58,971 bases of DNA from Mizuhopecten yessoensis. Its lineage: Eukaryota. The stretch covers positions 260,351 to 319,321 of the forward strand of contig NW_018406089.1 in the NCBI RefSeq assembly GCF_002113885.1, written 5' to 3'. A model generated the notes under the pieces. It was not told where the DNA came from, searched no databases, and saw nothing but the letters and a program-made list of their open reading frames with translations. A program made the position numbers and the translations under genes. Positions 7,963-56,439 of the stretch are shown one piece after another. Position 1 is the stretch's first letter. Each line of letters starts with the position of its first letter.

Positions 7963-19050
<11,088 letters not shown>

Positions 19051-25251: not shown

Positions 25252-27487
25252 TTAACAATCGGATGAAAACTGAAAAGGTGCAAGCGGACATGTACCATGA
25301 TTGTATGAATGCTCGTATTTGCCCAGACATCTAAAGCAAAAACGGAAGCCACACGATTGGTACTGACAGGTCATTGACAAACATCCGCCCATATGTTCAA
25401 TTATACTCCAACACTTAGGACATGCCCGGAGCTTTAGGATTTCCATATATGTTTTTGGTGAATCATGGAGAAGGGAGATGATGACGTCGTCAGGGTACAC
25501 GTTTGTCGATTCTATTTCTTGTTGCTTGAGAGTGTTTATGTGGAGCTTAGTTTGAAATAAACTCTTTTCTTCTACTGACAGAACAGCAGAAAGTGTGATA
25601 GTGCGTTCATTCCACTCGCAGCCACATTGGTCTCCCTTGATGTTTGTGATATATGGACACGTGATTGCAGAATTCCCTTTCTCTAGCTCGTACCAACAGT
25701 AGTCATACAGGGCCTGAGGGGCTACAATTAAAAAATTGCGACTGTCAAAAAATAACGATTTCGAAACATTTCTTTGAATTAAAAAATAAAAAATAGCATA
25801 ATTTTTCGTTAAATGATTTGTTTTTGTAAGATATAGGTAACCATACAGAATATGGGCTAATAGTTGTTTACAAATGACCAAAATAAGGTTATCGTAATAT
25901 CATATTTACAGAACTTTCAACTATGGTTGGTAAAAACGAGTTGTTATACTAACTGATAGCGTGTCCACATGGCATTTCGGCCCTTTTCTCCACTGCGTCC
26001 AGCGTTATCATGCACGGTTGAGTGGACCTTTTCACACCATTCCATAGCCTCCTCATCCGAACCAGTGTGTAGACTGCTTCAATAACGTCGTCGTCAGTGA
26101 AAACCTTACTTATCAAGCATTCTTTGGCAACGTCCACCGTTCGGCCGAGCCGTTTTATAACTGTCCCTGGGGGAAGTCGTTTAAACAAGGCCGACATCGT
26201 ATTTTTCTTTCTCTGTAAAACAAAACACATTAAGAAATTTAGAAGTTTTTCAAAAGAGGTTGAAGAGGCTAATACAACGTTTTGTTAGTATTTTGAACAT
26301 ATTACAGGTAAAACAGTATTCATATGAAAGTTATCGATTTAACGCGTATAGAAATGTATATATCTCACTTTTACAAAGAAAATTGCATATCGTTTAAAGG
26401 GAGGTAACCACTATTTGTCCAACTGTATTCTGATATTGAATCGGCTTTTTGTATATCTTGTGAGAAAAGGCAACATCAACGTACACTGTTATATGATTTT
26501 ATGTAGTTATTAACTGCTCTTTAAATAAGGTTTTACTGGCTATATTTATCCCAGGTTTGTTATAATGAAGACATCAATTACAAAGCTTTATTTTGATAGA
26601 CCTATTATTAATACTAACTATTTAAGATATTGTGTTTAGCCCATTTTGAAGGGATTAATTAAATGTTTTTGATTGTTTGTTTCTCCAGGGCTGGTATTCG
26701 TGAAACTGTTTTGTTTTCATGCTCAAATTCAGATGCTGCGCTATAGCTCTATTTCTTGTTCCAAGGAAGAAATAATGAAATTCTAATTTTATCAATAATT
26801 TGGAAGAATTTTGAAGAAAGTTAAAGCCGAATACTATTTTCAGCATTTGACAATGTCACATGACTTAAGCAAGTTACAGAAGGATGGTTTAAAACATAGA
26901 CTCCATGCTTGAGCGTGAAAGCGGTATCATAAATACGGGCCCTGATATTCTTTACTCCAAATAACTGATAAATTGCAAGGGACAGTTAAATGATCGAAAA
27001 TATTATTTATGTATTAAGTTTTTGCAGACATCTTTTCAACATATATGGAATATATAAATTTGATATCATTCCACTGCTGCTGTAAAATTATTGATGAATT
27101 GAAACATAGTTTACAAAATATTTTCAATTAATAATTAAACTATCAAGATGTCGACTTTTTCTAGCAAACATAAAGAAATTATTGAAGGTTGGATATTTTT
27201 CCAGTTGAAATAAGAATGGACATTCATCTTTTATCGAATTGACAACGACACACTTTTGATTGATTAACAACGTCTATATAAAACATTAATTCACATTATT
27301 TCTGCTATTTCAGCGATAATGCACATTTATTTCGTATGATATAGACTTAATTCAAACATTTTGTCAATGAACAATACACAAGTTATGGCTATCATGAGCA
27401 ACACAATAGACAAAACCAAATATATATTACCTCACTTAGTCGAATGTGACTTTCCTCAGAATCAGGGTGAACGATAGTTATTTTCAT
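25252..27487 (-). CDS. Mini-RBR family copy A: Ubl-like + degenerate RING1 + Rcat, no IBR; 261 aa
   Basis: Exons 27487-27431 (MKITIVHPDSEESHIRLSE), 26212-25954, 25721-25252; GT-AG, phases 0 and 1, open frame. Motifs RAEMPCGHAITPQAL, TCPY..C, RACPKC..GGCLSMTC..CGFRFCFRC..H..C. Confidence 0.88.
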
Positions 27488-27559
27488 GTTGATGCTGTCG
27501 TCTACAGCTGTTCGTTACTGTAGCGTTACGTATTGTGTGGATAAAGGCATCACCAGCCA

Positions 27560-27620
27560 TGTTTTATATATAAACTGAAGCAGCAGTCAGATCTATATTT
27601 AGATCGCTGCTACGTCAGCT
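27560..27620 (-). promoter_or_regulatory. Family promoter module (TATA box, MEF2-consensus site, half-CRE) of copy A
   Basis: TATA-like tttatatataaa 27563-27574, CTATATTTAG 27593-27602, CGTCA 27613-27617; same module upstream of every copy. Confidence 0.6.
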
Positions 27621-29634
27621 AGTCAGGTCTGAACAAGTCTGAGCAGAGCCTAACCTGATGATTCAGTCGTTATCAATTCAAGATACAAGTAAACGAAAAC
27701 AAGAAAAAAAAAGTATAAACATGTTTCAAACAAATTGTTTAAGTCAACCTGTTGACATTGACATTATCTTAATGAATTTCCATTAAGTACATGCATATTG
27801 TACATACAGCATTCATAATATCAGTCATATTTTGATACATTACACAGACGTGTTTAGTATTTTAGTGTATAACTTAATCAAGATAAGCCAACAAAGATAC
27901 AGCGGCTGCCCGACTCGGCTACCGATATCTCAGTTGCACCAGGTTACTATAGGCTGTACTAGCTAGCTGTGTGTGACGAGACAGTAAAACTTTTACCATT
28001 ACCTACATTATATATACTAATACATCAGTTCAGTTCTTAACTTATGGCAGTTACATATAAGGGGACAAAGACACCCACACTTACTCGCACACATCATCAG
28101 GGATGATATTTTCACATTTGTACTGTTTTATCACATGAAAATTTACACTTTTCAGTTAAGGAATTGAACTTGAAATATATTATTTAAGAGTTGATGTTGT
28201 ATTTTTGTATTGATGTGGTCTGTGATTTTCAATGGTTTAATATGTTCAACTCTTGTCTATTATATGTCTCCAAAATGGAATGTTTTTGCAGCTTTTTCCC
28301 CAGTAAATCACGAAAAATACTATATAATCAAAAATATTGCATTACCAATCAGATTTTAAAATGTTATTTCACTACACATGGGAAACCTCATATTTCATAT
28401 TTCTGTAAGCTTACGTAAACTTGGGTCGGTCCTTTGACTCACTCCTGCAGAACTATTGACTTGTAATATGTAAAATTAGAATTAGAATTTCACACTGTAA
28501 GTATCATTTTAGCGTGTTATTAACGGACATTGGCAGAAACAGGAGCCCGATGCCATCCCCCAATGAATCAGTTGCTTGTGGAAGGGGAAAAGAGGAGGTT
28601 GGAGGGAGGGTGTTGGGTAGCAATTGCCATGCCTGCCCTGTGTCCCCAGGTGTCAAACCTAGTTATTAGTCAGAACTTACTTGGGTTTTGTTTTGCAAGA
28701 CCATTCCTTGATCTAGTGACAATGTCGGGGTGTGCCGACCAACACGGAGACTTATTAATTTATCTAAATGTTACAATGTGAGAGTCATTCTTTAATTTGA
28801 TGAGGAGTGGAAATTAAAATAGCATGTTAAGATTTTACACCTTTATGGATCAGACCAGGTACAGACGAAACGTTGTAATAATAATTAATTCACATGCAAC
28901 GAATGAATAATTATTTAAGATATAACAAAATGCCTAACCTAAGGTACAGACTCCTGGTTAATTTGATTGATACAGATTACGAAGACCATCGTTATTATAA
29001 ACCTATCCCCTATCCCCTCCCACACACGCAAATTTATCAATCTCACTCTGTCCGGGTCTCGAAGTCACGACCTACGGCATCTAATTGCCTAGACTAGAAC
29101 TCTCCACAGCTCCTCAGTCGTAGTGTTAGAAGCTGCAGATATTTATAGGCTAGACAGGGTACTATTCATAAAATAGTCCTCCTTCGTCATTTGTGTTTCT
29201 GTCGTGATTTTTACACGTGTTTGTCATGCTGTCACTTTGACTGAACAGTTGAAAATCGTCACTAAAATTTAATTATCTCCAAATGTGTTCTTTAAACAAA
29301 CAAAAATGACGACAATGTAATATCCTCAACGTTGTTTGGCGCTTCTACGGGAGTCGTTGTGTAGCCGGCTTTTAATATAATATTACTATGCTTTTGCTCC
29401 TGAATATATTACGTTATTCTTTCTCACTCTGGGCAATTTAGAAATTCTGACTGTGAATCAACACATGTAAACTTTCTGTCAGAATAGGTTTCTGTATCAA
29501 CAAAATAATAATAATCGATATTAACATCAGGGTTTGCCTTTGGCAAAGAATTTAATAGCACATGTATATGACGAGTAGACGAGATTTAGTCATTTCCAAA
29601 TACAGCATGATTTGATTTTACCTCATCAATTGGC

Positions 29635-30005
29635 TGATAATTGTAAAGGTGCCATCTGACACATGATTGTACTCTGGCAGTAAAAAGTCAAAAAGACATC
29701 TAAAGCAGAAACGGAAGCCACAAGAAGGGTACTGACAAGTCATTGACAAACATCAGTCCGCATGTTTAATCTTCAACATTTAGGACATGCCCGGTGCGTA
29801 AGAAATATCCCAGTTCTAAATAGTGTGTTTGGTGAGTTATGAAGAAGGGAGATCATGGCGTCGTCGAGTACACATTTATCGATTCTATTTCTCGCTTCTT
29901 AATTGATTCTGTTTATGTGGTGTTTAGTCTGAAATAACCTCTTTTCTCTATAGGTCATAACTGCGGAAAGCGAGATAATGCGTGTCCTCCATTCACAACC
30001 ACACA
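29635..30005 (-). pseudogene. Degenerate exon-3 relic of the mini-RBR family
   Basis: Contains agacatctaaagcagaaacggaagccacaagaagggtactgaca and ttaggacatgcccgg as in the intact copies, but with stops and frameshifts and no upstream exons. Confidence 0.82.
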
Positions 30006-30422
30006 AGCATAATACTCATGTCATGTTGACAATACGTTAGAACACCATTATATAAACAATGAAAACAAGACCGGCCTTGGATTTCATATTTGCTAGTCAA
30101 GGTATTTTGTTATCTAATAAATCACACAATCATGATTATATAACACTCTGTCAAAACATTTCAGTTTATTATCAAAATAATAATGGTACATTATAACATT
30201 TATGCATATATGGACAACACTTAACAACACAGAAGCATGTTCAAATGTATAACGCAACACAGTGTACTACAATGGCATGAAACAGACAATATGGTCTGTG
30301 AGAGACACTTGTTTACCAACGTTTGACTGTTATATACATCGTGGGCAAGTATCAGTCGGTATCAAGTAATGTGATAAATTTAGTTCACCGAATGTGAAAT
30401 GGTTTGAACCAAATCTCCTTTT

Positions 30423-31829
30423 TCAATCGGATGCAAATTGTAAAGGTGCTTGCAGGCACTTACAATGATCTATCCCTGGTCCGTATTCATCTAGACATCT
30501 AAAGCAGAAACGGAAGCCACAAGAAGGGTACTGACATGTCATTGACAAACATCCGTCCGCATGTTCAATTATACTCCAACACTTAGGACATGCCCGGTGT
30601 TTTAAAGCGTTCGTACGTCCATATCCTAATAGTTTTGGCGAATTATGGAGAAGCGAAATCATGATGTCATCAGGGTACACATTTTTCGATTCCGTTTCTT
30701 GCTGCTTGATTCGATTTTTGTCGAGCTTAGTTTGAAATAACATCTTTTCTGTTTTGGACATAGCAGCAGAAAGTGTGATAGCTTGTCTTTTCCACATGTA
30801 TCCGCAGGTTTCTCCCTTAATGTTTGTGATATAAGGACACGTGATTTTGGAACTTCCTTTCTCCAGCTCACACCAGCAATAGTCATACAGGGCCTGAGGT
30901 GCTGCAATATAACAAATATTGCAACAATTAAAATATGTTTCAGCACATCTAACATTTAAATGACGTAAAACTTTGTTTTTGCTGATGAAGGATACATGCT
31001 TTTAACTGCCAACACAAATCAATTATCCATATTTAAACAACTCACCAACATAAGTGAACAACTGCAGTTAGTGTAAAATGATAGTTTTTTTGGGCGGGGG
31101 TTTAATACTTACTGATAGCATGTCCGCACGGCATTTCTGCCCTTTGCACATCTGTGTCCAGTGTTATCATGCACTGGTCAGCTGACTTTTTCATGCACCT
31201 CCATAGCTTCCTTGTTTCGACCAGCTGTGTGTAGAATGCTTCAGCAACGTCGCCGTGAGTGAAAACCTTACTTATCAAGCATTCTCTGTCGGCGTCGACC
31301 GTTCGTCCAAGCCGTTTTATAACTGTCCCTTGTGGAAATTGCTTAAATAAGGCCGACAACTTGGTCTTCTGTCTCTATAAAAACACAAAATATAAACAGA
31401 TAAGGATATATGTTGAAAAGATACCACCTTTTGTCAGTATTTTTATGGTAACATCCTAAAGATTCATTGTTGTGGACCTCAATGAACATTTCTATGATTC
31501 AAATTATAAACCGCACATATTTACTGCATAATTGGGGTGTGTAAACAAAGATATTATTTTCTTTCGGGCATAATTTGAAAAGTTGAATTGACTAGTTGCT
31601 ATCCTTTTCAGATATTTAACGGTATTCTTTCTGAACATATTAAATGAGTTAATCGGAAAAAAGTATTGAATTATTGCAGCATGATTGCATATTGTTTGAC
31701 AACCGACAGTTATCAAACTAGCTGTAGATATTGTTAACACCAAATTTGAATAACGAAACCAGGTATATTTACCTCACTAAATCGAATATGACTGCGCTTT
31801 AAATCAGGGTGGATGACAGTTATTTTCAT
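30423..31829 (-). CDS. Mini-RBR family copy B; 265 aa
   Basis: Exons 31829-31773, 31374-31113, 30901-30423; canonical splice sites, open frame; Rcat HRACPKCWSIIEHADGCLSMTCQYPSCGFRFCFRC; AATAAA at ~30165-30170. Confidence 0.88.
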
Positions 31830-32728
31830 GCTTATGACTTTCTCTCTCCTTTACCGTACGTGTTGTGTGAATACGTGAGCGGTGGACAGCTTTTATACAG
31901 CTAAATGTTTCAGTCAGACCTATATTTAGATTGTCGCTTCGTCAACATTTTTTAGCTTACTGGTCCGAACAGGTAGGTCTGTGTATAACCTAGCAATTCA
32001 GTCGTTATCAATACGAGTAGACGGATAGTAGGCGGTGTTTGAATGGAGGAATGCAATTATATATGTTCTGATTATAGTTACAGTCTTATAAGTAACTTCC
32101 TGTAATATTCCATTCAGTTTTAATATTACATTGCCAAGTATACGAAAAGAAGATTTTGTTTGGAAAATTCATAATGACATCTCATTAAGGGGATTTAAGT
32201 ACATCTAGTGAGTTGTAGTAAATTAAATGAGTGCAGTACGTACAGTAAATGATCCACAGTGGAACATATAAATTATGATAAATTATGATAAATTATGTAA
32301 TTAAAATCCACTGCGCCATCCGACCCCCCGATTTGTGTTTTGGTTTTGTTGATATTACCCAGGTTTGACTTTGTAGACGCGCCATTACTGATTTCACCTA
32401 TATTTACATTGCGGTCAGCACTGATATAGCAGAACATATCTAACACTCCAGAACACCTGTTCGTATTCACCTTGAAGGTTTTTTCAGGGTATCCATTTGA
32501 AAATGTCTTTAATTCATGATGAAAACTAGGCGTAAACTTTGTTTTAACACATCACACTACATATTGATTCGGGTTCAGATTTGTTGTGAATTGGTTTTAT
32601 GACAGAATGAAAGAGACAAACGTATTTATCTAAAATTTTATTTTACAAAAAACTTAAAAAAGATAACTAAGGCCCATTTCAAATTATGGGCACATATGTT
32701 TGACCCTCATCACAACCATCCATTAGAT

Positions 32729-35275
32729 GGACTGAGGTCACAATTTAATGCTTCCGAGTTCAGTACCCACGAATGAAGTCCCTTAGAAATATAGGTACTT
32801 TAGTAAAAAGACACCCTCAGTATTTCTTCCGAAATTCTGGTACTTTGGCAAGGAAACATTCAGCGTTCGGTGACATCCCTCATTGTTTTGGGTAGATGTG
32901 TTGAGTCGCATTGATTGGACTGTCTCGGTGCTGAGTTTCATCTTCAGTAGTTCCAGCACTAACATCTCATCATCTTATGTCATCTGTAGGCCGTGAACTT
33001 TGTTGGCACTCAGGAACATTGAGCGTGTCCACCAATTGTTACTGTCACCCCCAGAGCACACGACAGAATGTTGTTTGCATTTGGAGCAGTCACCGGAGTA
33101 GCATGAAACAGTCGCATCAAGCACAGCTGATACACGTTTTGATATAATGTCCATGTTTCCATTGTGTAGTTTCATCAGGTCCTTGAAGATCAGACTGCTC
33201 CGGGCTTTCAGGTCCTGAGAAAATATTTTCTGGGAATGTGCTCTCATCAGTCTGATTCGGCAAGGAAATATGGACTCACTGAACTTGGTACTGTTAGACT
33301 TCCGGAACTGTGCCTTGCCTAAATGTGTTGGGTCGGCCAGTCTCTCGACCTTCCACATGGAATCTAGGGCTTGTGTGGCCTCCTCAATACCTTTGGCTCC
33401 AGTACCGTCCCCGTCAGTCGTGGCGTACTTGACCAAAATACCTGACTGGTCAGCTGATCTCCAATGTTTTTTCCCATGGCTTGCTCTGACAGGCCGTCGT
33501 ATCGGTCAGTGTTGGCTGTGCAGTCAGGGTGGCCTCCAGGACAGTTGACATCATATCCTTTTCCCCTCAGCCAAGCACCAGTCCAGCACAGCTTGGTCTG
33601 AAGTGTGCGTGCTACTATCCACTTCTTAGGTGTTGATGTCTCAATGCCCAGACTCATTCCCTGTGAGGCATCCATGCCAGGTTTCTTAGCACTTCCAAAT
33701 GATGTGCTGTTGTATCGCCCGTCCAGTGCTATTCCGATAGTGCTCGGATTAGCATCCCCTCTCAGGTGATTAACCTCCACTACCTGTCTGGTCTTCTCGG
33801 CCATGTCTATTTTGTTGAGTGCTGTTATCTCCTTGGACACCATCTTAGCTTGTCGCTGCATCCAACTTTTTGCTCCGGCAGGTATGTTGAGGTGTCCGAG
33901 AAGCAGTCTGGCTCATTTGGTGCTGACAGATTGGCCACACAGAGCTGATGGTAGGTACCTGTTCACAAGTGCTGTCTTTGGTCCGGGCTTATTTGTGTCC
34001 GCTTCTCTGCAGAGCTTGTACAGTGGAGACCGGTAGCTGCACTTATCACACCGCACGGAACAACTCCATCCCAGTGCCCGTTTCCTCTCGGTGTCAAGTT
34101 CAAACTCTGGAATTTTGCATGTCTCGTGTTTTTCTGTATGGATTCTGAATACAGAATTCCACATCTTTACCATTAAGAGCACATCAATATGTCTGTTTCC
34201 CTCGATATTGTCCGGTTCAGAGTCTGAGTCTTCATGAGAAAATGTTGATGGACGAAGTATCCGAGCTGGACATGGTCTGTCTTCAGTGTCCGAGGCTATA
34301 AGTGATCGACCATCATGCCTAGGCTTGATCACCAGCTTGAACTCCTCTGTAGTTAGCCTTCTGGTAAATACAGCCTGGTCATTTGGGTGTCCAGCTTGAT
34401 CTTCTACAGGCATAAGTGTCTGGTCCTTATTCTTGGGAATATTTCCAGGTTGAAAGTGATTTTTCCTCCTCTTAGTATCTCCCTTCATAGTAGTAATAGT
34501 AGTAGTGGTGGTCAGTGGTCGGTTGTGTTGAGAATCCAAAATCAGAGTTGCGCTGACCACTTGTCTACTCATTCTTATGTAGTTTGTTTGTTATCAACTT
34601 TAAAGATGATGATTTAGAAAACAGGAGAGCCTTAACATCAAAGAGATAGGTCCCTTCCCCCCCTGTCTTTGGCACTGGCTATCTGTCTATGTGTGTGTAT
34701 GCAGGTGGCTGTGGGTGCGTCCATGCGTGCAAGTTATATCTATGATAATTGTAATTGTCTCTAGAGTATTTTGTGTAGACATGGAGACTGAATGATGGTT
34801 ATGGCACTGTTTAAATATTCATTTAATGAAATAATTAAAAATTTAAAGCAAAAATTTAAATTAAATTCTTAAAAAATCTTTACTTGAAGATTATAATGTA
34901 AACACTTTATTTGAGTAAGTGGAGATATTATTCTACTTCATAAATCACTTTACAGAATTGAAATATCATATTTTTTTCAGAAGATATGATATTTTCCCTG
35001 ACCCTTGTAGTTAGAAATATATGTAGAAAATGTCTGTCAAACTCAGCACAAAATCACAGTAGGATAGGGGTTTTTAAATTCATCATAACTTCTGTTTTAT
35101 ATGTCTTAAAATTATGCGGTTTTCACCAACAAGTTCAAAATTGCTTACAGTTACAGGAAAACTTTACTTTAAAATATAAAAAAGTCCTATAATAGGACTG
35201 AGGTCACAATTAAATGCTTCCGGGTTCAGTACCCACGAATGAGGTCCCTTAGAAATATAGGTACTTTAGTAAAAA
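32729..35275. repeat. Pair of 81-bp direct repeats (32729-32809 and 35195-35275) bracketing the transposase
   Basis: ggactgaggtcacaat...gtcccttagaaatataggtactttagtaaaaa, 3 mismatches; single copy at 46523-46603 in the duplicate unit. Confidence 0.9.
32810..34572 (-). mobile_element. Frameshifted DDE transposase (Mutator-like / Kolobok-type), 3'-truncated
   Basis: Consecutive minus ORFs 33913..34572, 33364..33861, 32975..33436, 32783..32965 with Cys/His N-terminal region and putative catalytic motifs IALDGRYNS, ATTDGDG, TQNNEG. Confidence 0.8.
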
Positions 35276-35811
35276 CTATACTATGCCTCTTAGAACTTGG
35301 TGTTTGTGTAAAAGTTTGGTGTTAAAATACTGTGGAGACATCAATCTAACAATTTCTATGTCAAATTTTTATATTGAACATTTCTTTTTTGGTGCAGGGT
35401 GCTGTGTGAAAAGTCCTGTGTTTACCTCTACCCCTGCCCCGCAAGATGTTGGTCTTGACCAGGTTAGAAGGAAAGTTGGCTATCGGATATTGGGAATTTG
35501 TTATGAAATTAAATGTTACAATGAAACATATAGTAAAATTAATTGTGGTCTTAGTCCAGATACAACCTGTTGATGTGACCTTGATGTTAACCTACACTTC
35601 TTGATTTCAATATCCAGGCTTCATCTCACGTACGGTTCTCGCTTGACAATCTCTTTTTCTGGAGCCTTGTTGGGAGTATTCAATGGCTTAGGGAGTAAAA
35701 AGAAATTAGGTCACAATATATTCTTGGTGACCGAGTTAGTGTTTGGACATCGGATGCAGTTGTTGACGTTTTTTAAAAGATATTGTTATGATAATAATGC
35801 CGGATAGGTCT

Positions 35812-35896
35812 CAATCTGATTAAAATCATCTGTTACATGGTTCAGGCGTAGAACGAAGTTAACGAAGCCATGTAACATATGATTTTAATCAGATTG
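35812..35896. mobile_element. 85-bp MITE with 29-bp TIRs and 9-bp TSD (Mutator-like signature)
   Basis: GATAGGTCT|caatctgattaaaatcatctgttacatgg ... ccatgtaacatatgattttaatcagattg|GATAGGTCT. Confidence 0.85.
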
Positions 35897-37975: not shown

Positions 37976-38015
<40 letters not shown>

Positions 38016-41091: not shown

Positions 41092-41151
41092 CTCACTTAA
41101 CCGTATTTGACTTCGCCGCTTTGAATCAGGGTGGACGATAGTTATTTTCAT
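41092..41151 (-). other. Orphan first exon of the mini-RBR family with its own promoter module
   Basis: ATG..MKITIVHPDSKRRSQIRLSE|gtaagt, TATA ~41227-41238, CTATATTTAG 41257-41266; no exon 2/3 of its own before copy C. Confidence 0.8.
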
Positions 41152-43512: not shown

Positions 43513-43800
43513 GCAAGAAGGGTACTGACAAGTCATTGACAAACATCAGTCCGCATGTTTAATCTTCAACATTTAGGACATGCCCGGTGCGTAAGAAATA
43601 TCCCAGTTCTAAATAGTGTGTTTGGTGAGTTATGAAGAAGGGAGATCATGGCGTCGTCGAGTACACATTTATCGATTCTATTTCTCGCTTCTTAATTGAT
43701 TCTGTTTATGTGGTGTTTAGTCTGAAATAACCTCTTTTCTCTATAGGTCATAACTGCGGAAAACGAGATAATGCGTGTCCTCCATTCACAACCACACAAA
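43513..43800 (-). pseudogene. Duplicated exon-3 relic, with an additional deletion of its 3' part
   Basis: Paralog of 29720-30005; junction atatgacg|caagaaggg removes ~150 bp present in unit 1. Confidence 0.8.
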
Positions 43801-44215
43801 CATAATACTCATGTCATGTTGACAATACGTTAGAGCACCATTATATAAACAATGAAAACAAGACCGGCCTTGGATTTCATATTTGCTAGTCAAGGTATTT
43901 TGTTATCTAATAAATCACACAATCATGATTATATAACACTCTGTCAAAACATTTCAGTTTATTATCAAAATAATAATGGTACATTATAACATTTATGCAT
44001 ATATGGACAACACTTAACAACACAGAAGCATGTTCAAATGTATAACGCAACACAGTGTACTACAGTGGTATTAAACAGACGCTAAGATCTGTGAGAGACA
44101 CTTGTTTACCAACATTTGACTGTTATATACATCGTGGGCAAGTATCAGTCGGTATCAAGTAATGTGATAAATTTAGTTCACCGAATGTGAAATGGTTTGA
44201 ACCAAATCTCCTTTT

Positions 44216-45622
44216 TCAATCGGATGCAAATTGTAAAGGTGCTTGCAGGCACTTACAATGATCTATCCCTGGTCCGTATTCATCTAGACATCTAAAGCAG
44301 AAACGGAAGCCACAAGAAGGGTACTGACATGTCATTGACAAACATCCGTCCGCATGTTCAATTATACTCCAACACTTAGGACATGCCCGGTGTTTTAAAG
44401 CGTTCGTACGTCCATATCCTAATAGTTTTGGCGAATTATGGAGAAGCGAAATCATGATGTCATCAGGGTACACATTTTTCGATTCCGTTTCTTGCTGCTT
44501 GATTCGATTTTTGTCGAGCTTAGTTTGAAATAACATCTTTTCTGTTTTGGACATAGCAGCAGAAAGTGTGATAGCTTGTCTTTTCCACATGTATCCGCAG
44601 GTTTCTCCCTTAATGTTTGTGATATAAGGACACGTGATTTTGGAACTTCCTTTCTCCAGCTCACACCAGCAATAGTCATACAGGGCCTGAGGTGCTGCAA
44701 TATAACAAATATTGCAACAATTAAAATATGTTTCAGCACATCTAACATTTAAATGACGTAAAACTTTGTTTTTGCTGATGAAGGATACATGCTTTTAACT
44801 GCCAACACAAATCAATTATCCATATTTAAACAACTCACCAACATAAGTGAACAACTGCAGTTAGTGTAAAATGATAGTTTTTTTGGGCGGGGGTTTAATA
44901 CTTACTGATAGCATGTCCGCACGGCATTTCTGCCCTTTGCACATCTGTGTCCAGTGTTATCATGCACTGGTCAGCTGACTTTTTCATGCACCTCCATAGC
45001 TTCCTTGTTTCGACCAGCTGTGTGTAGAATGCTTCAGCAACGTCGCCGTGAGTGAAAACCTTACTTATCAAGCATTCTCTGTCGGCGTCGACCGTTCGTC
45101 CAAGCCGTTTTATAACTGTCCCTTGTGGAAATTGCTTAAATAAGGCCGACAACTTGGTCTTCTGTCTCTATAAAAACACAAAATATAAACAGATAAGGAT
45201 ATATGTTGAAAAGATACCACCTTTTGTCAGTATTTTTATGGTAACATCCTAAAGATTCATTGTTGTGGACCTCAATGAACATTTCTATGATTCAAATTAT
45301 AAACCGCACATATTTACTGCATAATTGGGGTGTGTAAACAAAGATATTATTTTCTTTCGGGCATAATTTGAAAAGTTGAATTGACTAGTTGCTATCCTTT
45401 TCAGATATTTAACGGTATTCTTTCTGAACATATTAAATGAGTTAATCGGAAAAAAGTATTGAATTATTGCAGCATGATTGCATATTGTTTGACAACCGAC
45501 AGTTATCAAACTAGCTGTAGATATTGTTAACACCAAATTTGAATAACGAAACCAGGTATATTTACCTCACTAAATCGAATATGACTGCGCTTTAAATCAG
45601 GGTGGATGACAGTTATTTTCAT
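44216..45622 (-). CDS. Mini-RBR family copy D (apparently identical to copy B); 265 aa
   Basis: Exons 45622-45566, 45167-44906, 44694-44216; constant offset of 13793 from copy B. Confidence 0.88.
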
Positions 45623-47229
45623 GCTTATGACTTTCTCTCTCCTTTACCGTACGTGTTGTGTGAATACGTGAGCGGTGGACAGCTTTTATACAGCTAAATG
45701 TTTCAGTCAGACCTATATTTAGATTGTCGCTTCGTCAACATTTTTTAGCTTACTGGTCCGAACAGGTAGGTCTGTGTATAACCTAGCAATTCAGTCGTTA
45801 TCAATACGAGTAGACGGATAGTAGGCGGTGTTTGAATGGAGGAATGCAATTATATATGTTCTGATTATAGTTACAGTCTTATAAGTAACTTCCTGTAATA
45901 TTCCATTCAGTTTTAATATTACATTGCCAAATATACGAAAAGAAGATTTTGTTTGGAAAATTCATAATGACATCTCATTAAGGGGATTTAAGTACATCTA
46001 GTGAGTTGTAGTAAATTAAATGAGTGCAGTACGTACAGTAAATGATCCACAGTGGAACATATAAATTATGATAAATTATGATAAATTATGTAATTAAAAT
46101 CCACTGCGCCATCCGACCACCCGATTTGTGTTTTGGTTTTGTTGATATTACCCAGGTTTGACTTTGTAGACGCGCCATTACTGATTTCACCTATATTTAC
46201 ATTGCGGTCAGCACTGATATAGCAGAACATACCTAACACTCCAGAACACCTGTTCGTATTCACCTTGAAGGTTTTTTCAGGGTATCCATTTGAAAATTTC
46301 TTTAATTCATGATGAAAACTAGGCGTAAACTTTGTTTTTAACACATCACACTACATATTGATTCGGGTTCAGATTTGTTGTGAATTGGTTTTATGACAGA
46401 ATGAAAGAGACAAACGTATTTATCTAAAATTTTATTTTACTAACAACTTAAAAAAGGTAACTAAGGCCCATTTCAAACTATGGGCATATATGTTTGACCT
46501 TCATCACAACCATTCATTAGATGGACTGAGGTCACAATTTAATGCTTTCGGGTTCAGTACATACGAATGAAGTCCCTTAGAAATATAGGTACTTTAGTAA
46601 AAACTATACTATGCCTCTTAGAACTTGGTGTTTGTGTAAAAGTTTGGTGTTAAAATACTGTGGAGATATCAATCTAACAATTTCTATGTCATTTTTTTTT
46701 ATTTTGCATTTATTTTTTGGTGCAGGGTGCTGTGTGAAAAGTCATGTGTTTACCTCTACCCCTGACCCGGATGTTTATTTTTGACATTGGTGACACATGC
46801 AGACGACTAGCTCAAGAAAAAGGCCAACATGCTATGCTGAAATTTTGATATTTTACTCCCAAGATGTTGCTCTTGACCAGGTTAGAGGGAAAGTTGGCTA
46901 TCGGATATTGGGAATTTGTTATGAAATTAAATGTTACAATGAAACATATAGTAAAATTAATTGTGGTCTTAGTCCAGATACAACCTGTTGCTGTGACCTT
47001 GATGTTAACCTAGACTTCTTGATTTTAATATCCAGGCTTCACCTCACATACGGTTCTCGCTTGACAATCTCTTTTTCTGGAGCCTTGTTGGGAGTATTCA
47101 ATGGCTTAGGGATTAAAAAGAAATTAGGTCACAATATATTCTTGGTGACCGAGTTAGTGTTTGGACATCGGATGCAGTTGTTGACGTTTTTTAAAAGATA
47201 CTGTTATGATAGTAATGCCGGTTAGGTCT

Positions 47230-47314
47230 CAATCAGATTAAAATCATCTGTTACATGGTTCAGGCGTAGAACGAAGTTAACGAAGCCATGTAACATATGA
47301 TTTTAATCAGATTG
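47230..47314. mobile_element. Duplicated copy of the 85-bp MITE
   Basis: Same TIRs; TSD gttaggtct / gataggtct. Confidence 0.8.
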
Positions 47315-48485
47315 GATAGGTCTAAGATGAATACTAGGCTTCAAGTTTCTTCTAAATACATCACACTGCATATTGATTCGGATTCACAATGTTATGAATT
47401 GATTTTATAAGAGAAACAAACGAATACATTTTCAAATTTTATTTTTACAAACAACTTTTTTCAAGTTTATTTTAAAATATTTCAGTACAGATATGAATTG
47501 TATAAATAATTTGAAATGAAATGTTATGCCATCAATAAGTATGGTTTATAAGTTTAGGAAACATGTTAAGGTACATGGGCACTGAACAAACTGTTTATAA
47601 CATTTTTGGAAATCATTTTGGTCTAAGATCCTCAGTGTCATATCTTTCAATATAACCAGGACATTTTACGTACTGTTAATGATACTGAACACTGATCACA
47701 ACTCACGACAGGTTGACTCACTTTATAGTGTCAGCTATTTTGTCATGATGGCATACTAAATAGAACAAAAAACAAGGACATGACCAGTTTTATTCTGTGT
47801 ATTTGTATACTTGTGTGGATCATATGATCATGAGTAAAAGAGGAAATACATGACAGGGAGCTATTTCTTTCCAATTTCTTTCTTAAAAATAAATGAAAGA
47901 TAAAAAGGGGAAGTAATTTTGCAAAGATTTGTGAAAAGCATAAAAGCCTACTTAATTAAACAGTAAGTGGACCTTTAAAATGTGTAAACATCCAAACAAA
48001 AAGAAGTTAATTTAGCATGGAATGACCGTGTTGTCAGCCATGATATTAAAGCAAGTTTGTAGATAATCAATGAAGGAGACTACATTCTCCAAGTACGAAA
48101 TCATGTCATGTGACAATCAGTTTCATGAGTGTAAAGGTCAACGTATATAACGTTCTGCAAAAACATTTAAGTGAATTATTGAAATAGTAATTGTTCATAA
48201 AGACATTTATGCTTATATTGGCAACAAGAAACAACACAGAAGCATGTTCAATATATAACACAACACAGTGTTCTACAATGGCATGAAACAGACGCTATGG
48301 TCTGTGATAGACACTTGTTTACCAACGTTTGACTGTTATATACATCGTTTACAAAACATTTGATTGCGTTAAAGAGGAAAAGCTGACACTTTTAAGGATA
48401 CAAGTGCGCAAGTATCAGCCGGTATCAAGTAATGTGATAAATTTAGTTCACCGAATGTGAAATTGTTTGAACCGAATCTCCTCTT

Positions 48486-49424
48486 TCAATCGGATGCAAA
48501 TTGTAAAGGTGCCTGCAGGCACTTAAGATGATCTACCCCTGGTCCGTATTCATCTAGACATCTAAAGCAGAAACGGAAGTCACAAGAAGGGTACTGACAT
48601 GTCATTGACAAACATCCGTCCGCATGTTCAATTATACTCCAACATTTAGGACATGCCCGGTGCTTTAAACTGTTCGTTTGTCCATGTACATAAAGTTTTG
48701 GCGAATTATGGAGAAGCGAAATCATGACGTCATCAGGGTACACATTTTTCGACTCGGTTTCTTGCTGCTTGATTCGATTTTTGTCGAGCTTAGTTTGAAA
48801 TAACATCTTTTCTGTTTTGGACATAGCAGCAGAAAGTGTGATAGCTTGTCTATTCCACTTGTATCCGCATGTTTCTCCCTTGAAGTTTGTGACATAAGGA
48901 CACGTGATTTTGGAATTTCCTTTCTCTAGCTCATACCAGCAATAGTCATAAAGGGCCCGAGGTGCTGCAATATAACAAATATTCAGATATTCAAATGAAT
49001 GCACTGATCAATGATATTGTACTATCTCAATAAGATACGCATATATTTTGTTTGAGCCTGGCTTCAGTCCCCGATTATGTTACCTCTGACTATGTATTAA
49101 AACAGCCAATCATATTTACTATCATCGACTGATCATCGTTGGTCTTTTGTTATTGTTATATTTCGACACAATACGATAGTGACTGCCCCTGTGGTAGGAA
49201 AACACAGTTCTTTGTTCCTTTTGTATTATTCATGTTTCATGAGGCAACACCTTACGTTTGGCTTGAAGATTAAGCGTTCGCCCAGGTGAGGACGTCCTTA
49301 AATGACCTTAGCTGTTAATAGGACGTTAAACAAAATGAAACCAAACCAAACCATCACGAGGGTGAAGTTAAAACATAATTCATCTCGGAGAAACTGGGAC
49401 AACACATGTATGATGGTCCCTATC

Positions 49425-49489
<65 letters not shown>

Positions 49490-50243
49490 CGTACTTACTT
49501 ATAGCATGTCCACACGCCATTTTGGCCCTTGGCTCAACCGTGTCCAGTGTGATCATGCACGAGTTACTTGACTTGTCTACACCATTCCATAGCCTCCTGG
49601 TCCTGACTACGGGAGTGTACACAGCTTCGACTACGTCGCCGTCAGAAAAGACCTTATTTAGCTGGCATTCCTTGCCGACGTCGATTGTTCGGCCACGTCG
49701 TTTTATAACTGTTCCCTTTGGAAATCGTTTAAACAATGTCGACAGCCCAGTCGTCTGTCTCTGTAAAGATTAAATGTAGGATGACAATTGAGATTATTTG
49801 CCGAAGGAGTGGAAGGAGATAAAACTATTCATCAATAATTTGATTGTAAAACAACAGCTTTAAAAACAATTGATTGGTTTTCATGTATAACCATCCGATG
49901 CTTATCCCAGTGTATATATCACAGCTATACCGTAGAAATAGCGTTTGATATACATGATTTTATTTCTTTTCAAACTACTTACTTGTAATATTTTACAAAC
50001 TTATTACAGAGCTGCATTCACAAAGCCAGGATAATATGCCGCTTCATTTTCAATTTACAACGACTCAGTGTTTATTAAAAATGAACATTTTTAATTTATA
50101 ATACACTCTCTTTGCCAATCAGCAGTAATTTAATAGCTATTGACATTATGAACATAACAGTTAAATGACTTAACTATATGTACCTCACTTAACCGTATTT
50201 GACTTCGCCGCTTTGAATCAGAGTGGATGATAGTTATTTTCAT
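48486..50243 (-). CDS. Mini-RBR family copy E (paralog of C); 266 aa
   Basis: Exons 50243-50184, 49760-49499, 48964-48486; open frame; Rcat RACPKC..DGCLSMTCQYPSCDFRFCFRC. Confidence 0.88.
49424..49485. repeat. (GA)n microsatellite in intron 2 of copy E
   Basis: Direct reading, ~30 units with one interruption. Confidence 0.95.
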
Positions 50244-52194
50244 GTTGATACTGTCGTCTATCTTGATACCTTCGTATTGTTTGAATTAAGATTGTGTGAG
50301 TCAGTTTATATACGTACTCAGTACGTGATAATTACATCAATATACCTTTTCGATAGTCAGATCTATATTTAGTTTATCGCTTCGTCAGCAGCTGTTAGTT
50401 TCAGACCCTGCAAAGTGGGCCAGGATCAAATTTATTGAAAAAGGCTGAAACCCTTACAACAATTAACTGAATGGATATATGTAAGAAAATTTTGATGTTC
50501 TCACTGAAAGTATGAACATGTTATTTATAAGCCCAATAAAGAAAACTCTTTATTTCTTAGTCACCTGTACGAACTTATCGATCAGGCTTCGAAGTGACCT
50601 TTGAACCCCATCACATATGATAGATTTATAGTTAGTCGCGAGTCAGTACGGCAGGACTGAATTATAGTAAAGAAATTCTGAAGATTTTATTAGAGTAAAC
50701 CCTTCAGATCTAGATTTTTTTAAAGCCAAATCTAAAATCATAGACATTATATTTCTATTATTTCTTAACTCAATATTCAAAAAAATGTATAGTTTTCACC
50801 TTTACGAGCTTATTGATCAGGCTAAGAGACGGCCTTTACCTGCCTGACGTCATGGATTTGATATGTCATGATCTGTCGTGCAAGTTTACAAGATGATTTA
50901 CGTTATAAAGGAAATAACAAACGTCACGAAAAAAGTTATTTTGTACACATTTTAATCTTATCAATGTGAATTAATACATATTAATGATTCTAAACTATAG
51001 TTACGTTTAGTCTAGATCTATTTTAGTTTCTTAAACAACATTCCAACTTCGGCCACGAAACGGCCTGCATACACGGTATACGCAAGTCTATATACATGTT
51101 GTCAGATTTATATTTAGATTATCGCTTTGTCAGCGACTGCTAGTTTTGCGGAGAACGGATCTAAACAGAGCCATTCCTGATTAATTCAGTCGCTTTTAAT
51201 GAAAGAAGACGTGTAGGCTTCATCGCAATTCAAGTTTAAATACAATGAAAATTATAACAGAAACACGTAAAATATACCGATAAACAGACTATAATCTTAA
51301 GAACTCTTGTTAAATGATTTAATAATTTCATTTGGCTGCTGAACTAACTATATTGTACTACTATATATCATTCGGAACACCTCGCCTTTGCTACCTAGAA
51401 AATGACGAAAGGGTATTCCGAATGTATTATATATAAGAGTGCTATTTTGTTTACAAATAAAATTGTATGACATTAAGTATGTAATACATTTAATAACGTT
51501 CCCCACAGGCTTAATGACTACAGTGTTGACTCAATCACTTCTAAAATATGGTCATATTTAATAATCAAATGCATGTTGACTTGCTCAAGCCAAAAAAAGT
51601 AGGTATTTCGTTGGGAAAAATCTGTGTTCCGTGCTCCTCTTCGTGCCAAGTTGTTTTATCCGTATGAGGCTCAAATGTTTTAAAGAGTTATTTAGACTGG
51701 TGACAAAATCGTCTATATCTTTTTGTAATATGAATGCCGTTATTTTTATTATGCTCATTAGCATGTCTTGTTATTGTGCTGTCACTCTCCCTGTTTTCAC
51801 TTTCAGGACGTGACATTTCTTAGATTTACATGTTAAGGGTTTATTTCCAAGTCCTGATACGCTTTTCAGCAAAAATCAGCCTCATACGAGAACCCAAACA
51901 AGTAGGCCAAACTATGTCTACAGTTTGCTGGAAAATCTTGCCATCTTACTCAACTAAGATATTTATCAACCACGAACTCAATCATTCCCATGATAACTTA
52001 AAGATATAGTTGATATATACCAGATTTCCATTAGAAAACAAACTGGAAGTCATCTTTAGAATTGATTTCTTTATTGTTTTCTCCAGAATTATGATAATTC
52101 CTGTGTTGAGTTTGAAAAACGATCAAAGCGTGTATAATTAAATAATATCTATTACACCAATATCGCTCAGCAATAGCAACACAAAGAAAACAAA

Positions 52195-52805
52195 GTGCAA
52201 TATACAGATATGTACAAAACAGGTAATATATTTACAGATATGTACAAAATAGGTAATATATTTACAGATATAAACAAAACAGGTAATATTTTTACAGATA
52301 CAAGAAACAGGTATTTTTTTTTTACAGATATGAACAAAACAGGTAATATTTTTACAGATATAAACAAAACACGTAATATTTTACAGATATAAACAAAACA
52401 GGTGATATTTTTACAGATATTAACAAAACTGGTGGTATTTTTACAAATACGTACAAAACAGGTAATATTTTACAGATGTAATCTTAACGAAAGGTAATAT
52501 TTTACAGATATGTAAAAAACAAAAAGTAATATTTTACAAATATGTACAAAACAAAAGGTTATATTTTACAAATTTGTACAAAACAAATGGTAATATTTTT
52601 ACAGATATGTAAAAAAAAAAAGCAAACTTTTTTAGAAATATGAAGAATACAGAAGACAATATTGTTTTACAAAAATGTACAAAAATCAAGGTCATATTAT
52701 TACAGACAAACACAAAACAAAACGTCAAACTTTTACTGTCACGAACAAAACAGAAAAGGCGTGTTTTTAAACAGATATGTACACAAATCAAGGTAATATG
52801 AATCA
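52195..52805. repeat. ~30-bp degenerate minisatellite
   Basis: Unit tttacagatat(g/a)(t/a)acaaaacaggtaatatt. Confidence 0.85.
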
Positions 52806-53154
52806 CATACAGGTATGACGTAGGAAAGACTCTAAAAGGGATATTTCGTCATTAACGTTACGATCCCTTTTTATACATTGAGTTTGGGCATACAAAGTCA
52901 CAAAGTAGTGCTTTTGTAATTTAAAACGCACATTTAAATGACAAATTCGGAAACTTTGATACCTACGTAAATGAGCAACTCTACAGAAGCAGTACGGGTT
53001 AGAAGTAGAACAGTGTGTGTCTTCCTTCCATTATACTAATAGACGGATAGAAGACATTACATTCTTAACGGAGTATTGAATTTGTTTTCATCATTGTTTT
53101 TGTTTTGTTTGACTTATCACAAAAAGCAAAATAGATCACGCACATTTTTTTTAT

Positions 53155-54660
53155 TTACAATAGAGCAAACTGTGTTGGTCCTGGTTTACAATCACGTTTA
53201 CAACAATTTGAACTCTCTTTAAGGCACCTGAAACAAAACGAAAAATTACAACCTTGGTATTTGCAGTCCATAGCTCTGCATCCTCCGGTATGCTCGATAA
53301 CAGAAAAACACCTGGGACATGCTCGCCGCAATGGACAAGTCATGTCATCCATCGTCATGTTAGGAGAGTCATGTATAAGTGATATGATTGTTTCGTTAAT
53401 GACCGGAATTTCCTGACAGGAGTTGTGCATTGTATAAGCAAACAATGTGTTCCCTATCAATTGTTTATCCTGTTTACTTGTGTTTGCGGATTTGCCAACA
53501 TCCTTCATACTCCAGAGCGTACCACATGTATAGGCATGGGTACTGTAGACAAATGGACATGTAATTGTTGTCTTCCCCTTTTCCAACTCGCTCCAACAAT
53601 AGTCTTATATCGCTTGTGGTGCTGAAACAGACAATTAGCGTTACATGTGATATAACAACTTCTGTTAGTAAACACAAGGTTTGTTAGTGTGTGTAGTGAT
53701 AGGAATGCGTTTCGTCCTATTATCAAGTAATGTAACCCGCGGCTAATTAAATCGGTTACGTCACCATCATCGATTTCTGATCCTGGTTTGCTTATTTCAT
53801 AAATTAAATCAGTGTTTAGCCAAGGATGACATCAAGCCACAAATGAACTCCGATCGACCTATGCAACAATACACAAAAAGTGTAAAGTCCTCGTGTCGAC
53901 TGTCATATCATATTGCTGTTACTTGTTCAACTTTGTATGTATGTTTTAATTGTTTTAGTCATTACCAGATGTAATACTTTTCAAGCTGACAGGTTTTTGA
54001 GATGATGCGTTTTAAGAACTAAATAATATTTTATTAAATGTTGTATTGTAGCAATCACTATCGACAGATTTGTGCTACTGATTTTCTCACACACACACTC
54101 TAGGTTTTCTCACTCCCGACTCCTTGGGGATAAATCTGCTAGGAGTTGGTAAATGTTTTTGGTAACCCAATAGTGGGTACTATCCTGGATGTTATTTCAT
54201 TGGTCAATCTTCTAATAATGACGATGCTTTGCGACGTCGACTTTCATTGTGACGTCATAGTTCAAGGCTGTTTTCCCTATCATCAACAGAAATAAGATAT
54301 TCCTACGAGAAACATAAGACTTTCTAGATATAATATCTAAACGTTGTGGAGAAAAAGGCCCACAAATGGTTGATTATCATGTTTATATTATTCTTGGTGA
54401 ACCTCGTATCTTTATACAATTTGAAAATTAAATAACTCGAGTAAGATAAGCATGATTAACCACTCTTCACTCGTTGGGGAACCTCTATTTCTAGAACTGT
54501 CATAACGTGCACCCTTATATTCAATATGAACGACATCACCGTCCTTGAAAGTCTTGCTCAACAGTTGGCGCTTGTTGGCGTGAATAATCGTCCTGCGAAG
54601 TGGATACCTGATGAAGGTTCAGGTCGGTAGACGTTTTAACAGGGTGGTCAGCATCTGTCT
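53155..54660 (-). pseudogene. Divergent mini-RBR copy F, pseudogene
   Basis: Exon-2-like segment from 54660 (RQMLTTLLKRLPT*...KTFKDGDVV) with TGA at 54619-54621 and no recognisable CGH half; exon 3 53621-53155 (PQAI*DYCWSELEKG...RRACPRC..GGCRAMDC..CNFSFCFRC) with TAA at 53605-53607; exon 1 not found. Confidence 0.8.
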
Positions 54661-56430: not shown

Positions 56431-56439
56431 GCCTCTATC

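What the first reader, a model, noticed from the sequence alone, without database searches (positions are those of the whole stretch)
25252..54660. Tandem array of 'IBR-less' mini-RBR ubiquitin ligases (Ubl-RING1*-Rcat)
Seen: five intact 3-exon genes (A-E, 261-266 aa) plus relics, all on the minus strand with identical intron phases. Each has a RING1-like segment (CMIT..RAEMPCGHAITPQALYDYCW..CPY..C), a helical linker and a complete Rcat (CPKC..[G/D]GC..MTC..C..FCFRC..H..C). Established: RBR E3s (Parkin, HHARI/Ariadne, HOIP, RNF144) are defined by RING1-IBR-Rcat, and the IBR helps position E2~Ub and bind allosteric ubiquitin. Here the ~65 aa between RING1 and Rcat contain no Cys cluster, and the same layout holds in divergent copy F, so IBR loss is ancestral to the family and not recent decay. 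Inference: a lineage-expanded minimal RING-to-Cys E3 family (or RBR decoy/regulator) undergoing birth-and-death evolution, as often seen in immune and stress gene clusters. I cannot establish novelty without searches.
Basis: partly seen in the sequence, partly recalled or inferred. Interest (0 to 1): 0.85.

Follow-up and report, generated by a model that had tools for sequence, protein, structure and literature searches.

The report
Scallop RBR-type ligase genes lacking IBR
A cluster of five intact, transcribed Yesso scallop genes encodes small ubiquitin-ligase-like proteins that keep the E2-docking RING-like domain and the catalytic-cysteine domain of RBR ligases but have cleanly lost the middle (IBR) domain that helps define that enzyme class, which offers a natural test of whether that domain is needed.

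Summary
On the minus strand of this Mizuhopecten yessoensis window lie five intact three-exon genes (261-266 aa, intron phases 0 and 1), two exon-3 relics, an orphan exon 1 and a broken sixth copy (F). RNA reads and a spliced RNA contig confirm the junctions, and no extra exon is seen in the transcripts recovered. Each product is Ubl, then a RING-like domain keeping only one zinc site, then two helices, then a complete Rcat with the catalytic Cys. Pfam finds a single IBR-type hit. New here: the genes are not an orphan family. They are a branch of a widespread, uncharacterised RBR subfamily that databases label "E3 ubiquitin-protein ligase DDB_G0292642-like" or si:ch211-212k18.15. It occurs in a chytrid, corals, bivalves and vertebrates. 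Its other members have the same one-zinc RING1 plus a normal IBR. In alignment the IBR is excised precisely between two retained helices. Trees show at least two independent IBR losses in bivalves. The paralogues evolve at dN/dS 0.30-0.41. Ligase activity, the E2 partner, substrates and any immune role are untested. I found no paper describing natural IBR-less RBRs. Verdict: a new variant of a known kind, of moderate to high interest. The scan had earlier noted only the Ubl, on this same window.

The parts
25252..27487 (-). Gene A (261 aa): exon 1 27431-27487, exon 2 25954-26212, exon 3 25252-25721 (with stop). It is the most divergent intact copy.
   Evidence: tblastn map; splice sites and exon translations; Pfam IBR-type hit on the exon-3 ORF
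29678..30006 (-). Relic 1: exon-3 fragment (linker plus part of the Rcat) with in-frame stops
   Evidence: 2 TGA, 1 TAA
30423..31829 (-). Gene B (265 aa): exon 1 31773-31829, exon 2 31113-31374, exon 3 30423-30901
   Evidence: Pfam
37041..39677 (-). Gene C (266 aa): exon 1 39618-39677, exon 2 38936-39197, exon 3 37041-37519. NCBI LOC110450855 (P0001, 178 aa) is an N-truncated model of it.
   Evidence: Pfam
41074..41151 (-). Orphan exon-1-like piece (MKIT...), with no exons 2 or 3 attached
43498..43799 (-). Relic 2: duplicate of relic 1 within the segmental duplication
44216..45622 (-). Gene D (265 aa, protein identical to B): exon 1 45566-45622, exon 2 44906-45167, exon 3 44216-44694
   Evidence: RNA-seq junctions 44694|44906 (11 reads) and 45167|45566 (7 reads plus one contig), GT..AG on the minus strand
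48486..50243 (-). Gene E (266 aa): exon 1 50184-50243, exon 2 49499-49760, exon 3 48486-48964. NCBI LOC110450778 (P0007) has the same exons 1 and 2 but a different 3' end.
   Evidence: A 982-nt RNA contig joins 50184|49760 and 49499|48964 and runs through all of exon 3 to 48283
53155..54660 (-). Copy F, a pseudogene of the P0008 subtype: exon-3 homologue 53155-53621 with TAA at codon 5; exon-2 remnant 54448-54660 with TGA and without the CGH end; no exon 1 found
27805..50662 (.). Segmental duplication carrying [relic + B + C] and [relic + D + E]: 27805-32809 matches 41725-46603 (94.6-99.1%), and 35442-40089 matches 46860-50662 (95-97%). The first unit has an extra 2.6-kb insert at 32810-35441.
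   Evidence: self-BLAST; Mutator-like transposase remnants in the insert

Best explanation
These are functional, transcribed genes for a compact RBR-derived ubiquitin (or ubiquitin-like) ligase. They belong to the 'DDB_G0292642-like / si:ch211-212k18.15' RBR subfamily, whose RING1 keeps only the second zinc site (C-x-H...C-x(2-14)-C). In the scallop branch the IBR zinc module has been deleted precisely, and the helices that flanked it are now directly joined. Likely mechanism (inferred): the RING-like domain docks a charged E2. The retained RING1-IBR and IBR-Rcat helices, which in solved RBRs contact the allosteric and donor ubiquitin respectively, guide ubiquitin. The invariant Cys in the G-C-x-x-M-T-C motif of the Rcat takes ubiquitin as a thioester and passes it to a substrate. 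The N-terminal Ubl, which has no Gly-Gly end, regulates the enzyme or docks it to a partner, as in Parkin or HOIL-1. Shown: gene structure, expression, domain content, homology, IBR deletion and purifying selection. Inferred: E2 binding, thioester relay, the Ubl role and the substrates. The cluster evolves by duplication, gene conversion and decay.
For: Gene models and splicing. Rcat: Pfam IBR, IBR_1 and IBR_2 hits. The family profile matches ARIH1 RING2 at E 4.9e-11, with all zinc ligands and the catalytic Cys aligned. These positions are invariant in 13 IBR-less proteins. RING1-like domain: AF2 pLDDT 88.6. In an unbiased scan of 48,161 chains the best matches are RBR RING1 domains: HOIL-1L Z 7.7, rmsd 1.9 over 64 residues, then ARIH2, RNF144A, CUL9, HOIP and Parkin. 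All 50 listed rows appear to be RING-type or RING-like zinc-finger domains. C, H, C, C and W are invariant in 33 sequences. Ubl: Z 10.6, rmsd 1.4 over 67 residues against ubiquitin. The whole model hits Parkin (3.5e-7), HOIL-1 and HHARI. IBR deletion: alignments A1 and fam.aln show a clean gap of about 55-65 residues between conserved helices. Selection: dN/dS 0.30-0.41. Intact orthologues exist in four pectinid genera.
Against: No biochemical data exist. One RING zinc site is missing, and the IBR, which in solved RBR complexes helps hold the allosteric ubiquitin (PMC9834252), is absent, so transfer efficiency could be low or nil. The His two residues after the catalytic Cys, present in many IBR-containing relatives (GCKHMTC), is Ser or Thr here (GCLSMTC). 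Expression seen was low, a few reads per exon. dN/dS of 0.3-0.4 is fairly relaxed. The structure models are of a Ylistrum orthologue (about 72% identical over exon 3), not of the spliced window protein.
Confidence: 0.6

Rival explanations
1. Non-catalytic decoys or regulators. The proteins still bind an E2, ubiquitin or the partners of IBR-containing paralogues, but without the IBR they cannot complete transthiolation. They would act as inhibitors or adaptors.
For: The IBR and RING zinc site I are absent. The His at +2 from the catalytic Cys is replaced. IBR-containing paralogues coexist in the same genome (P0032, P0119).
Against: The catalytic Cys and all eight Rcat zinc ligands are invariant in every IBR-less lineage, including those that lost the IBR independently. 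A decoy would not need the nucleophile.
Confidence: 0.25
2. Decaying gene copies. The IBR loss is a step in pseudogenisation and the cluster has no function.
For: Relics and pseudogene F lie in the same cluster. Expression is low.
Against: There are five uninterrupted reading frames with canonical splice sites and spliced transcripts. dN/dS is 0.30-0.41 even between A and the others at dS 0.5-0.65. Intact IBR-less orthologues occur in Pecten, Argopecten and Ylistrum. The clade has 100/99 support.
Confidence: 0.05
3. Annotation or assembly artefact. An IBR-coding exon is missed, or the duplicated copies are collapsed or expanded haplotypes.
For: B and D are 99.1% identical, and the NCBI models of C and E are truncated or have alternative ends. 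A haplotig origin of the B/D or C/E pairs cannot be excluded.
Against: The place where the IBR would sit lies inside exon 3, which is one open frame. An RNA contig spans exon 1, exon 2 and all of exon 3. Independent annotations in three other species give the same 262-269-aa architecture. The haplotig question affects only the copy number, not the architecture.
Confidence: 0.03

Closest known systems
'E3 ubiquitin-protein ligase DDB_G0292642-like' / zebrafish si:ch211-212k18.15 family (database names only; I found no study of it)
   Same: Same RING1-like motif (M-[SP]-C-G-H-A-x-x-P..L..YC...G...F.CP...C..W). Same helices, same Rcat (RACPxC..IEH..GC..M.C..C...FCF.CL) and same C-terminal C-x-x-A-P-x-Q. 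Some members also start with a Ubl or a true ubiquitin domain (P0015, P0018). The scallop genes nest inside this family in the tree.
   Different: All 117 vertebrate members examined, and the coral, chytrid and many bivalve members, have a normal IBR (CPxC...FCWxC...C..C) between the two helices. The window's clade lacks it entirely.
Parkin and HOIL-1 (Ubl-containing RBR ligases)
   Same: N-terminal Ubl, followed by a RING1-type fold, helices and an Rcat. Foldseek's best whole-model hits are Parkin (E 3.5e-7) and HOIL-1. The RING1-like domain superposes best on HOIL-1 RING1 (Z 7.0-7.7).
   Different: No RING0, NZF or REP elements. RING1 has one zinc site instead of two. There is no IBR. Only the Rcat is similar by sequence.
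ARIH1/HHARI RING2 (Rcat)
   Same: Best sequence match in the PDB (1wd2_A, E 4.9e-11), with the catalytic Cys and zinc ligands aligned.
   Different: No Ariadne domain, no UBA-like domain, no IBR. GCNHMVC in ARIH1 against GCLSMTC here.
MYCBP2 RING-Cys-relay (RCR) ligase (from my own knowledge: Pao et al., Nature 2018)
   Same: Layout analogy only: a RING, then a helical linker, then a zinc-binding catalytic-Cys domain, with no IBR.
   Different: The catalytic domain here is an Rcat by sequence, not the tandem-cysteine domain. There is no evidence of two relay cysteines. The two are not homologous beyond the RING.

Membership tests
RBR (RING1-IBR-Rcat) E3 ligases | Rcat/RING2 domain with two zinc sites and a catalytic Cys | tested here: met
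   Pfam IBR, IBR_1 and IBR_2 hits at the C-terminus. The profile matches ARIH1 RING2 at 4.9e-11 with the Cys aligned. These positions are invariant in alignment A4.
RBR (RING1-IBR-Rcat) E3 ligases | IBR (BRcat) zinc domain between RING1 and Rcat | tested here: not met
   Only one IBR-type Pfam hit. No Cys lies in the 69-residue linker. A clean alignment gap falls where relatives have the IBR. An RNA contig shows no extra exon.
RBR (RING1-IBR-Rcat) E3 ligases | Canonical cross-brace C3HC4 RING1 with two zinc sites | tested here: not met
   Only C-x-H...C...C (site II) is invariant. The site-I positions read D/C-M-I-T plus a single, non-universal Cys. Pfam zf-RING_UBOX scores only E about 0.005, below its threshold. 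The fold is nevertheless RING1-like (Z 7.7 to HOIL-1L RING1).
RBR (RING1-IBR-Rcat) E3 ligases | E2~Ub to E3-Cys thioester relay | not testable with these tools
   Needs biochemistry.
DDB_G0292642-like / si:ch211-212k18.15 RBR subfamily | Shared one-zinc RING1 motif, flanking helices, Rcat motif and C-terminal CxxAPxQ | tested here: met
   Alignments A1, A2 and A3. phmmer hits cover the whole exon-3 product.
DDB_G0292642-like / si:ch211-212k18.15 RBR subfamily | Phylogenetic nesting among family members | tested here: met
   In the ML tree, with IBR columns removed, the window clade sits among bivalve IBR-containing members. The deep branches are poorly resolved.
Parkin-type Ubl-RBR | N-terminal ubiquitin-like fold | tested here: met
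   Tested on orthologue P0002: Z 10.6, rmsd 1.4 over 67 residues against ubiquitin. The window's exons 1 and 2 align to it. There is no Gly-Gly end.
Parkin-type Ubl-RBR | RING0/UPD and REP elements | tested here: not met
   No such Pfam hits. Only about 15 residues lie between the Ubl and the RING1-like domain.
RCR ligase (MYCBP2) | Tandem-cysteine catalytic domain | tested here: not met
   The C-terminal domain matches Rcat/IBR profiles and ARIH1 RING2.

The most novel reading that the evidence does not exclude
The IBR is dispensable for the RING-to-Cys ubiquitin relay in this RBR subfamily. The scallop proteins would then be active, naturally minimised E3s with a catalytic module of about 180 residues (one-zinc RING, two helices, Rcat). 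This state evolved at least twice independently in bivalves. It would imply that the two ubiquitin-guiding helices, not the IBR zinc module, are the essential middle part of an RBR.
Probability: 0.4. Interest if true: 0.75.

Novelty: new variant of a known kind. Interest (0 to 1): 0.6.

Why it matters
RBR ligases are defined by RING1-IBR-Rcat. [quoted passage not shown] Natural proteins have deleted exactly the IBR yet kept the catalytic Cys, all Rcat ligands and both flanking helices. They stay under purifying selection and have arisen more than once. They provide a ready-made experiment on what the IBR is for, and a very small scaffold for structural work. The work also draws attention to a widespread RBR subfamily with a one-zinc RING1 (chytrid, corals, bivalves, sharks to afrotherian mammals) that appears never to have been studied. 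If the proteins prove inactive, they would instead be the first natural RBR-derived decoys.

Tried and rejected
1. Complex prediction of the orthologue's Ubl (residues 1-75) against its RING1-like-to-Rcat part (82-262) gave no verdict (score 0.00, partner poorly folded, no alignment used). It is not evidence either way.
2. Foldseek on the isolated RING1-like model gave no hit at E <= 0.001, although all the hits were RING domains. The VIA scans were needed.
3. The AU test for a single origin of all IBR-less forms on the first data set was inconclusive (p 0.112). Adding P0116-P0120 then gave well-supported branches that force at least two losses.
4. Paper searches found nothing on this family or on natural IBR-less RBRs, only engineered deletion mutants. 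The terms were DDB_G0292642, the LOC identifiers, 'lacking the IBR' and similar phrases, degenerate or atypical RING1, and RBR plus bivalve.
5. The alternative 3' exon of the NCBI model P0007 (47042-47104, and 35624-35686 for C) was not supported by any junction in the four runs laid.
Full-length inferences rest on the database orthologues P0002-P0008 and on exon-by-exon translations.
7. An E2 docking prediction was not possible, because no E2 sequence was available by reference.
8. The organism behind the IBR-less Logan protein P0009 (SRR12008144) could not be identified.
Full report
**Source and observation.** The window is from Mizuhopecten yessoensis. The exon-3 product of copy C is 100% identical to NCBI LOC110450855, and copy E corresponds to LOC110450778. 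tblastn with full-length pectinid orthologues and direct reading of the junctions confirm five intact three-exon genes on the minus strand (A to E). All share ATG...GAG|GT (phase 0) and ...AT(A/C)A|GT (phase 1). The summed coding lengths give 261, 265, 266, 265 and 266 aa. Also present are two exon-3 relics with stops (29678-30006, 43498-43799), an orphan exon 1 (41074-41151) and the divergent copy F.

**Copy F is broken.** F has a TAA at codon 5 of exon 3 and a TGA in exon 2. Its exon 2 has lost the ..RAKMPCGHAI end. No exon 1 was found upstream, where minisatellites begin. Its intact counterpart is Pecten maximus P0008.

**Transcription.** In raw RNA-seq reads (run X24) the D/B junctions 44694|44906 (11 reads) and 45167|45566 (7 reads) appear with GT..AG on the minus strand. 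A 982-nt RNA contig (run X1) joins E exon 1 to exon 2 (50184|49760) and exon 2 to exon 3 (49499|48964). It then runs through the whole of exon 3 into the 3' UTR. The place where an IBR would lie is inside this single exon, so no IBR-coding exon is hidden. Depth was low. The alternative 3' exon of the NCBI model P0007 was not seen.

**Domains: Rcat and Ubl.** Pfam finds one IBR-type hit, at the C-terminus, in each exon-3 product and in the full-length orthologues. It finds only a sub-threshold zf-RING_UBOX match (E about 0.005) over the RING1-like segment. A family profile matches the RING2/Rcat of ARIH1 (1wd2_A, E 4.9e-11), Parkin, CUL9 and ARIH2, with the catalytic Cys and zinc ligands aligned. 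An AlphaFold2 model of the Ylistrum orthologue P0002 has pLDDT 87.7 (72% identical to C over exon 3). Residues 1-71 superpose on ubiquitin (Z 10.6, rmsd 1.4 over 67 residues). The whole model hits Parkin (3.5e-7), HOIL-1 and HHARI.

**Domains: RING1-like segment.** Modelled alone, this segment has pLDDT 88.6. It gives only RING hits in Foldseek, though at weak E-values. In an unbiased scan of 48,161 chains it superposes best on RBR RING1 domains. The top match is HOIL-1L (Z 7.7, rmsd 1.9 over 64 residues), followed by ARIH2, RNF144A, CUL9, HOIP and Parkin. Across 33 family members only C-x-H...C-x(2-14)-C and a Trp are invariant. These are the ligands of RING zinc site II. Site I is gone. The proteins should therefore bind three zinc ions, not the six of a canonical RBR.

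**Relatives.** An exhaustive phmmer search showed that the genes are not an orphan family. The same RING1-like motif, helices, Rcat and C-terminal CxxAPxQ occur in proteins that also have a normal IBR. These come from corals (Acropora, labelled 'ARIH1-like' or 'polyubiquitin'), a chytrid, bivalves (Tegillarca, Solemya, Pecten, Saccostrea, and M. yessoensis itself) and vertebrates. In vertebrates the family is large: 366 hits at E <= 1e-8, from sharks to afrotherian and xenarthran mammals. Sources label it 'E3 ubiquitin-protein ligase DDB_G0292642-like', 'si:ch211-212k18.15' or miscellaneous RBR names. All 117 vertebrate members examined contain the IBR motif. Some members begin with a true ubiquitin domain (P0015: PF00240, 1.2e-12).

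**The IBR deletion.** In alignment the IBR-less proteins show one clean gap of about 55-65 residues exactly over the IBR. The helix before it (A..L...E...FE.K) and the helix after it (..L.NCP) are conserved on either side.

**History of the IBR loss.** ML trees were built without the IBR columns. The window copies, their Pecten, Argopecten and Ylistrum orthologues, and the P0008 subtype form one clade, all IBR-less (100/99). The loss therefore predates the pectinid radiation. A second IBR-less group (P0027, P0113, P0116, P0117) nests with IBR-containing pectinid and oyster proteins (99/93 and 97/92). Well-supported branches therefore force at least two independent losses, and the best tree needs four, including two Solemya lineages. 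A single origin was not rejected on the smaller data set (AU p 0.112), so the exact number remains open.

**Cluster dynamics.** A unit [relic + B + C] is duplicated as [relic + D + E]. Identity is 94.6-99.1%, and B and D are 99.1% identical with identical proteins. One unit carries a 2.6-kb insert with Mutator-like transposase remnants. dN/dS among A, B, C and E is 0.30-0.41. B against C has dS 0.79 in exon 2 but 0.12 in exon 3, which indicates gene conversion of exon 3. In the rest of the genome only a few distant paralogues exist. In Pecten maximus the intact F-type gene lies next to an A-E-type gene, so the cluster is old. A haplotig origin of the B/D and C/E pairs cannot be excluded.

**Mechanism (inference).** The most likely reading (about 0.6) is an active, minimised RBR-type E3. 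The one-zinc RING docks E2~Ub. The two retained helices guide ubiquitin; in solved RBR complexes the RING1-IBR helix contacts the allosteric ubiquitin and the helix before RING2 contacts the donor ubiquitin (PMC9834252). The invariant Cys of G-C-x-x-M-T-C forms the thioester. The Ubl regulates or docks. Against this reading: the IBR's contribution to allosteric ubiquitin binding is lost, the His at +2 from the Cys is Ser or Thr, and there are no biochemical data. The main rival (about 0.25) is a non-catalytic decoy. Its weakness is that the nucleophile and all Rcat ligands are invariant in independently IBR-less lineages. Pseudogenisation and artefact are unlikely.

**Comparison and novelty.** By descent the genes belong to the RBR superfamily, in the DDB_G0292642-like subfamily. 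They fail two of the three domain criteria that define an RBR: the IBR and the two-zinc RING1. In layout they resemble the RING-linker-catalytic-Cys arrangement of MYCBP2 (my own knowledge), but the catalytic domain is an Rcat. I found no paper on natural IBR-less RBRs or on this subfamily. The library is incomplete, so this is absence of evidence only. I rate the finding a new variant of a known kind, interest about 0.6. An immune or stress role is speculation.

**Limits.** Complex prediction for a Ubl-to-catalytic-module contact gave no verdict.

Noticed in passing
window 30426-30901 vs 37044-37519, and 31113-31374 vs 38936-39197: Mosaic divergence between paralogues B and C. Exon 3 has dS 0.12 (93.7% DNA identity over 588 bp), but exon 2 has dS 0.79. 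This indicates gene conversion or recombination confined to the 3' exon.
   Followed up: partly
window 32810-35441: Insert present in only one copy of the segmental duplication. It has three consecutive minus-strand ORFs matching successive parts of the Pfam Mutator-like transposase (PF20700; E 4e-17 to 1e-23), so it is a frame-broken MULE remnant.
   Followed up: partly
window 47042-47104 and 35624-35686: The NCBI model LOC110450778 (P0007) splices from inside exon 3 (after ..SPKLY) to this small downstream exon, which removes the Rcat. No such junction was seen in the four RNA runs laid.
   Followed up: partly
window 47250-47449 and 49250-49449: Very high RNA depth with many loose ends and multi-allelic positions. 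These are probably copies of an abundant transcribed repeat (SINE-like), unrelated to the genes.
   Followed up: no
window 2199-4668, 11589-14066, 55034-57448, 58130-58971: Long minisatellite arrays (periods of about 50, 46, 39 and 41 bp). The last two occupy the region where exon 1 of pseudogene F would be expected.
   Followed up: no
window 4963-5319 (minus strand): The ORF ending ..VKAMIIADTHILGSKTGHWFDKLRR looks like the first metallophosphoesterase exon of MPPE1. Pfam gave no hit for this fragment alone.
   Followed up: no
P0018/P0099 (Acropora) and P0015 (chytrid), relatives found: IBR-containing relatives start with a near-canonical ubiquitin. The Acropora protein's ubiquitin ends LVLRLPGG, and some sources annotate the protein as 'polyubiquitin'. 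The ancestral form may have been a ubiquitin-fused RBR.
   Followed up: no
G000:C65005:443-598: A small unplaced contig carries a 90%-identical copy of the start of exon 3. It may be a haplotig or a further fragment of the cluster.
   Followed up: no
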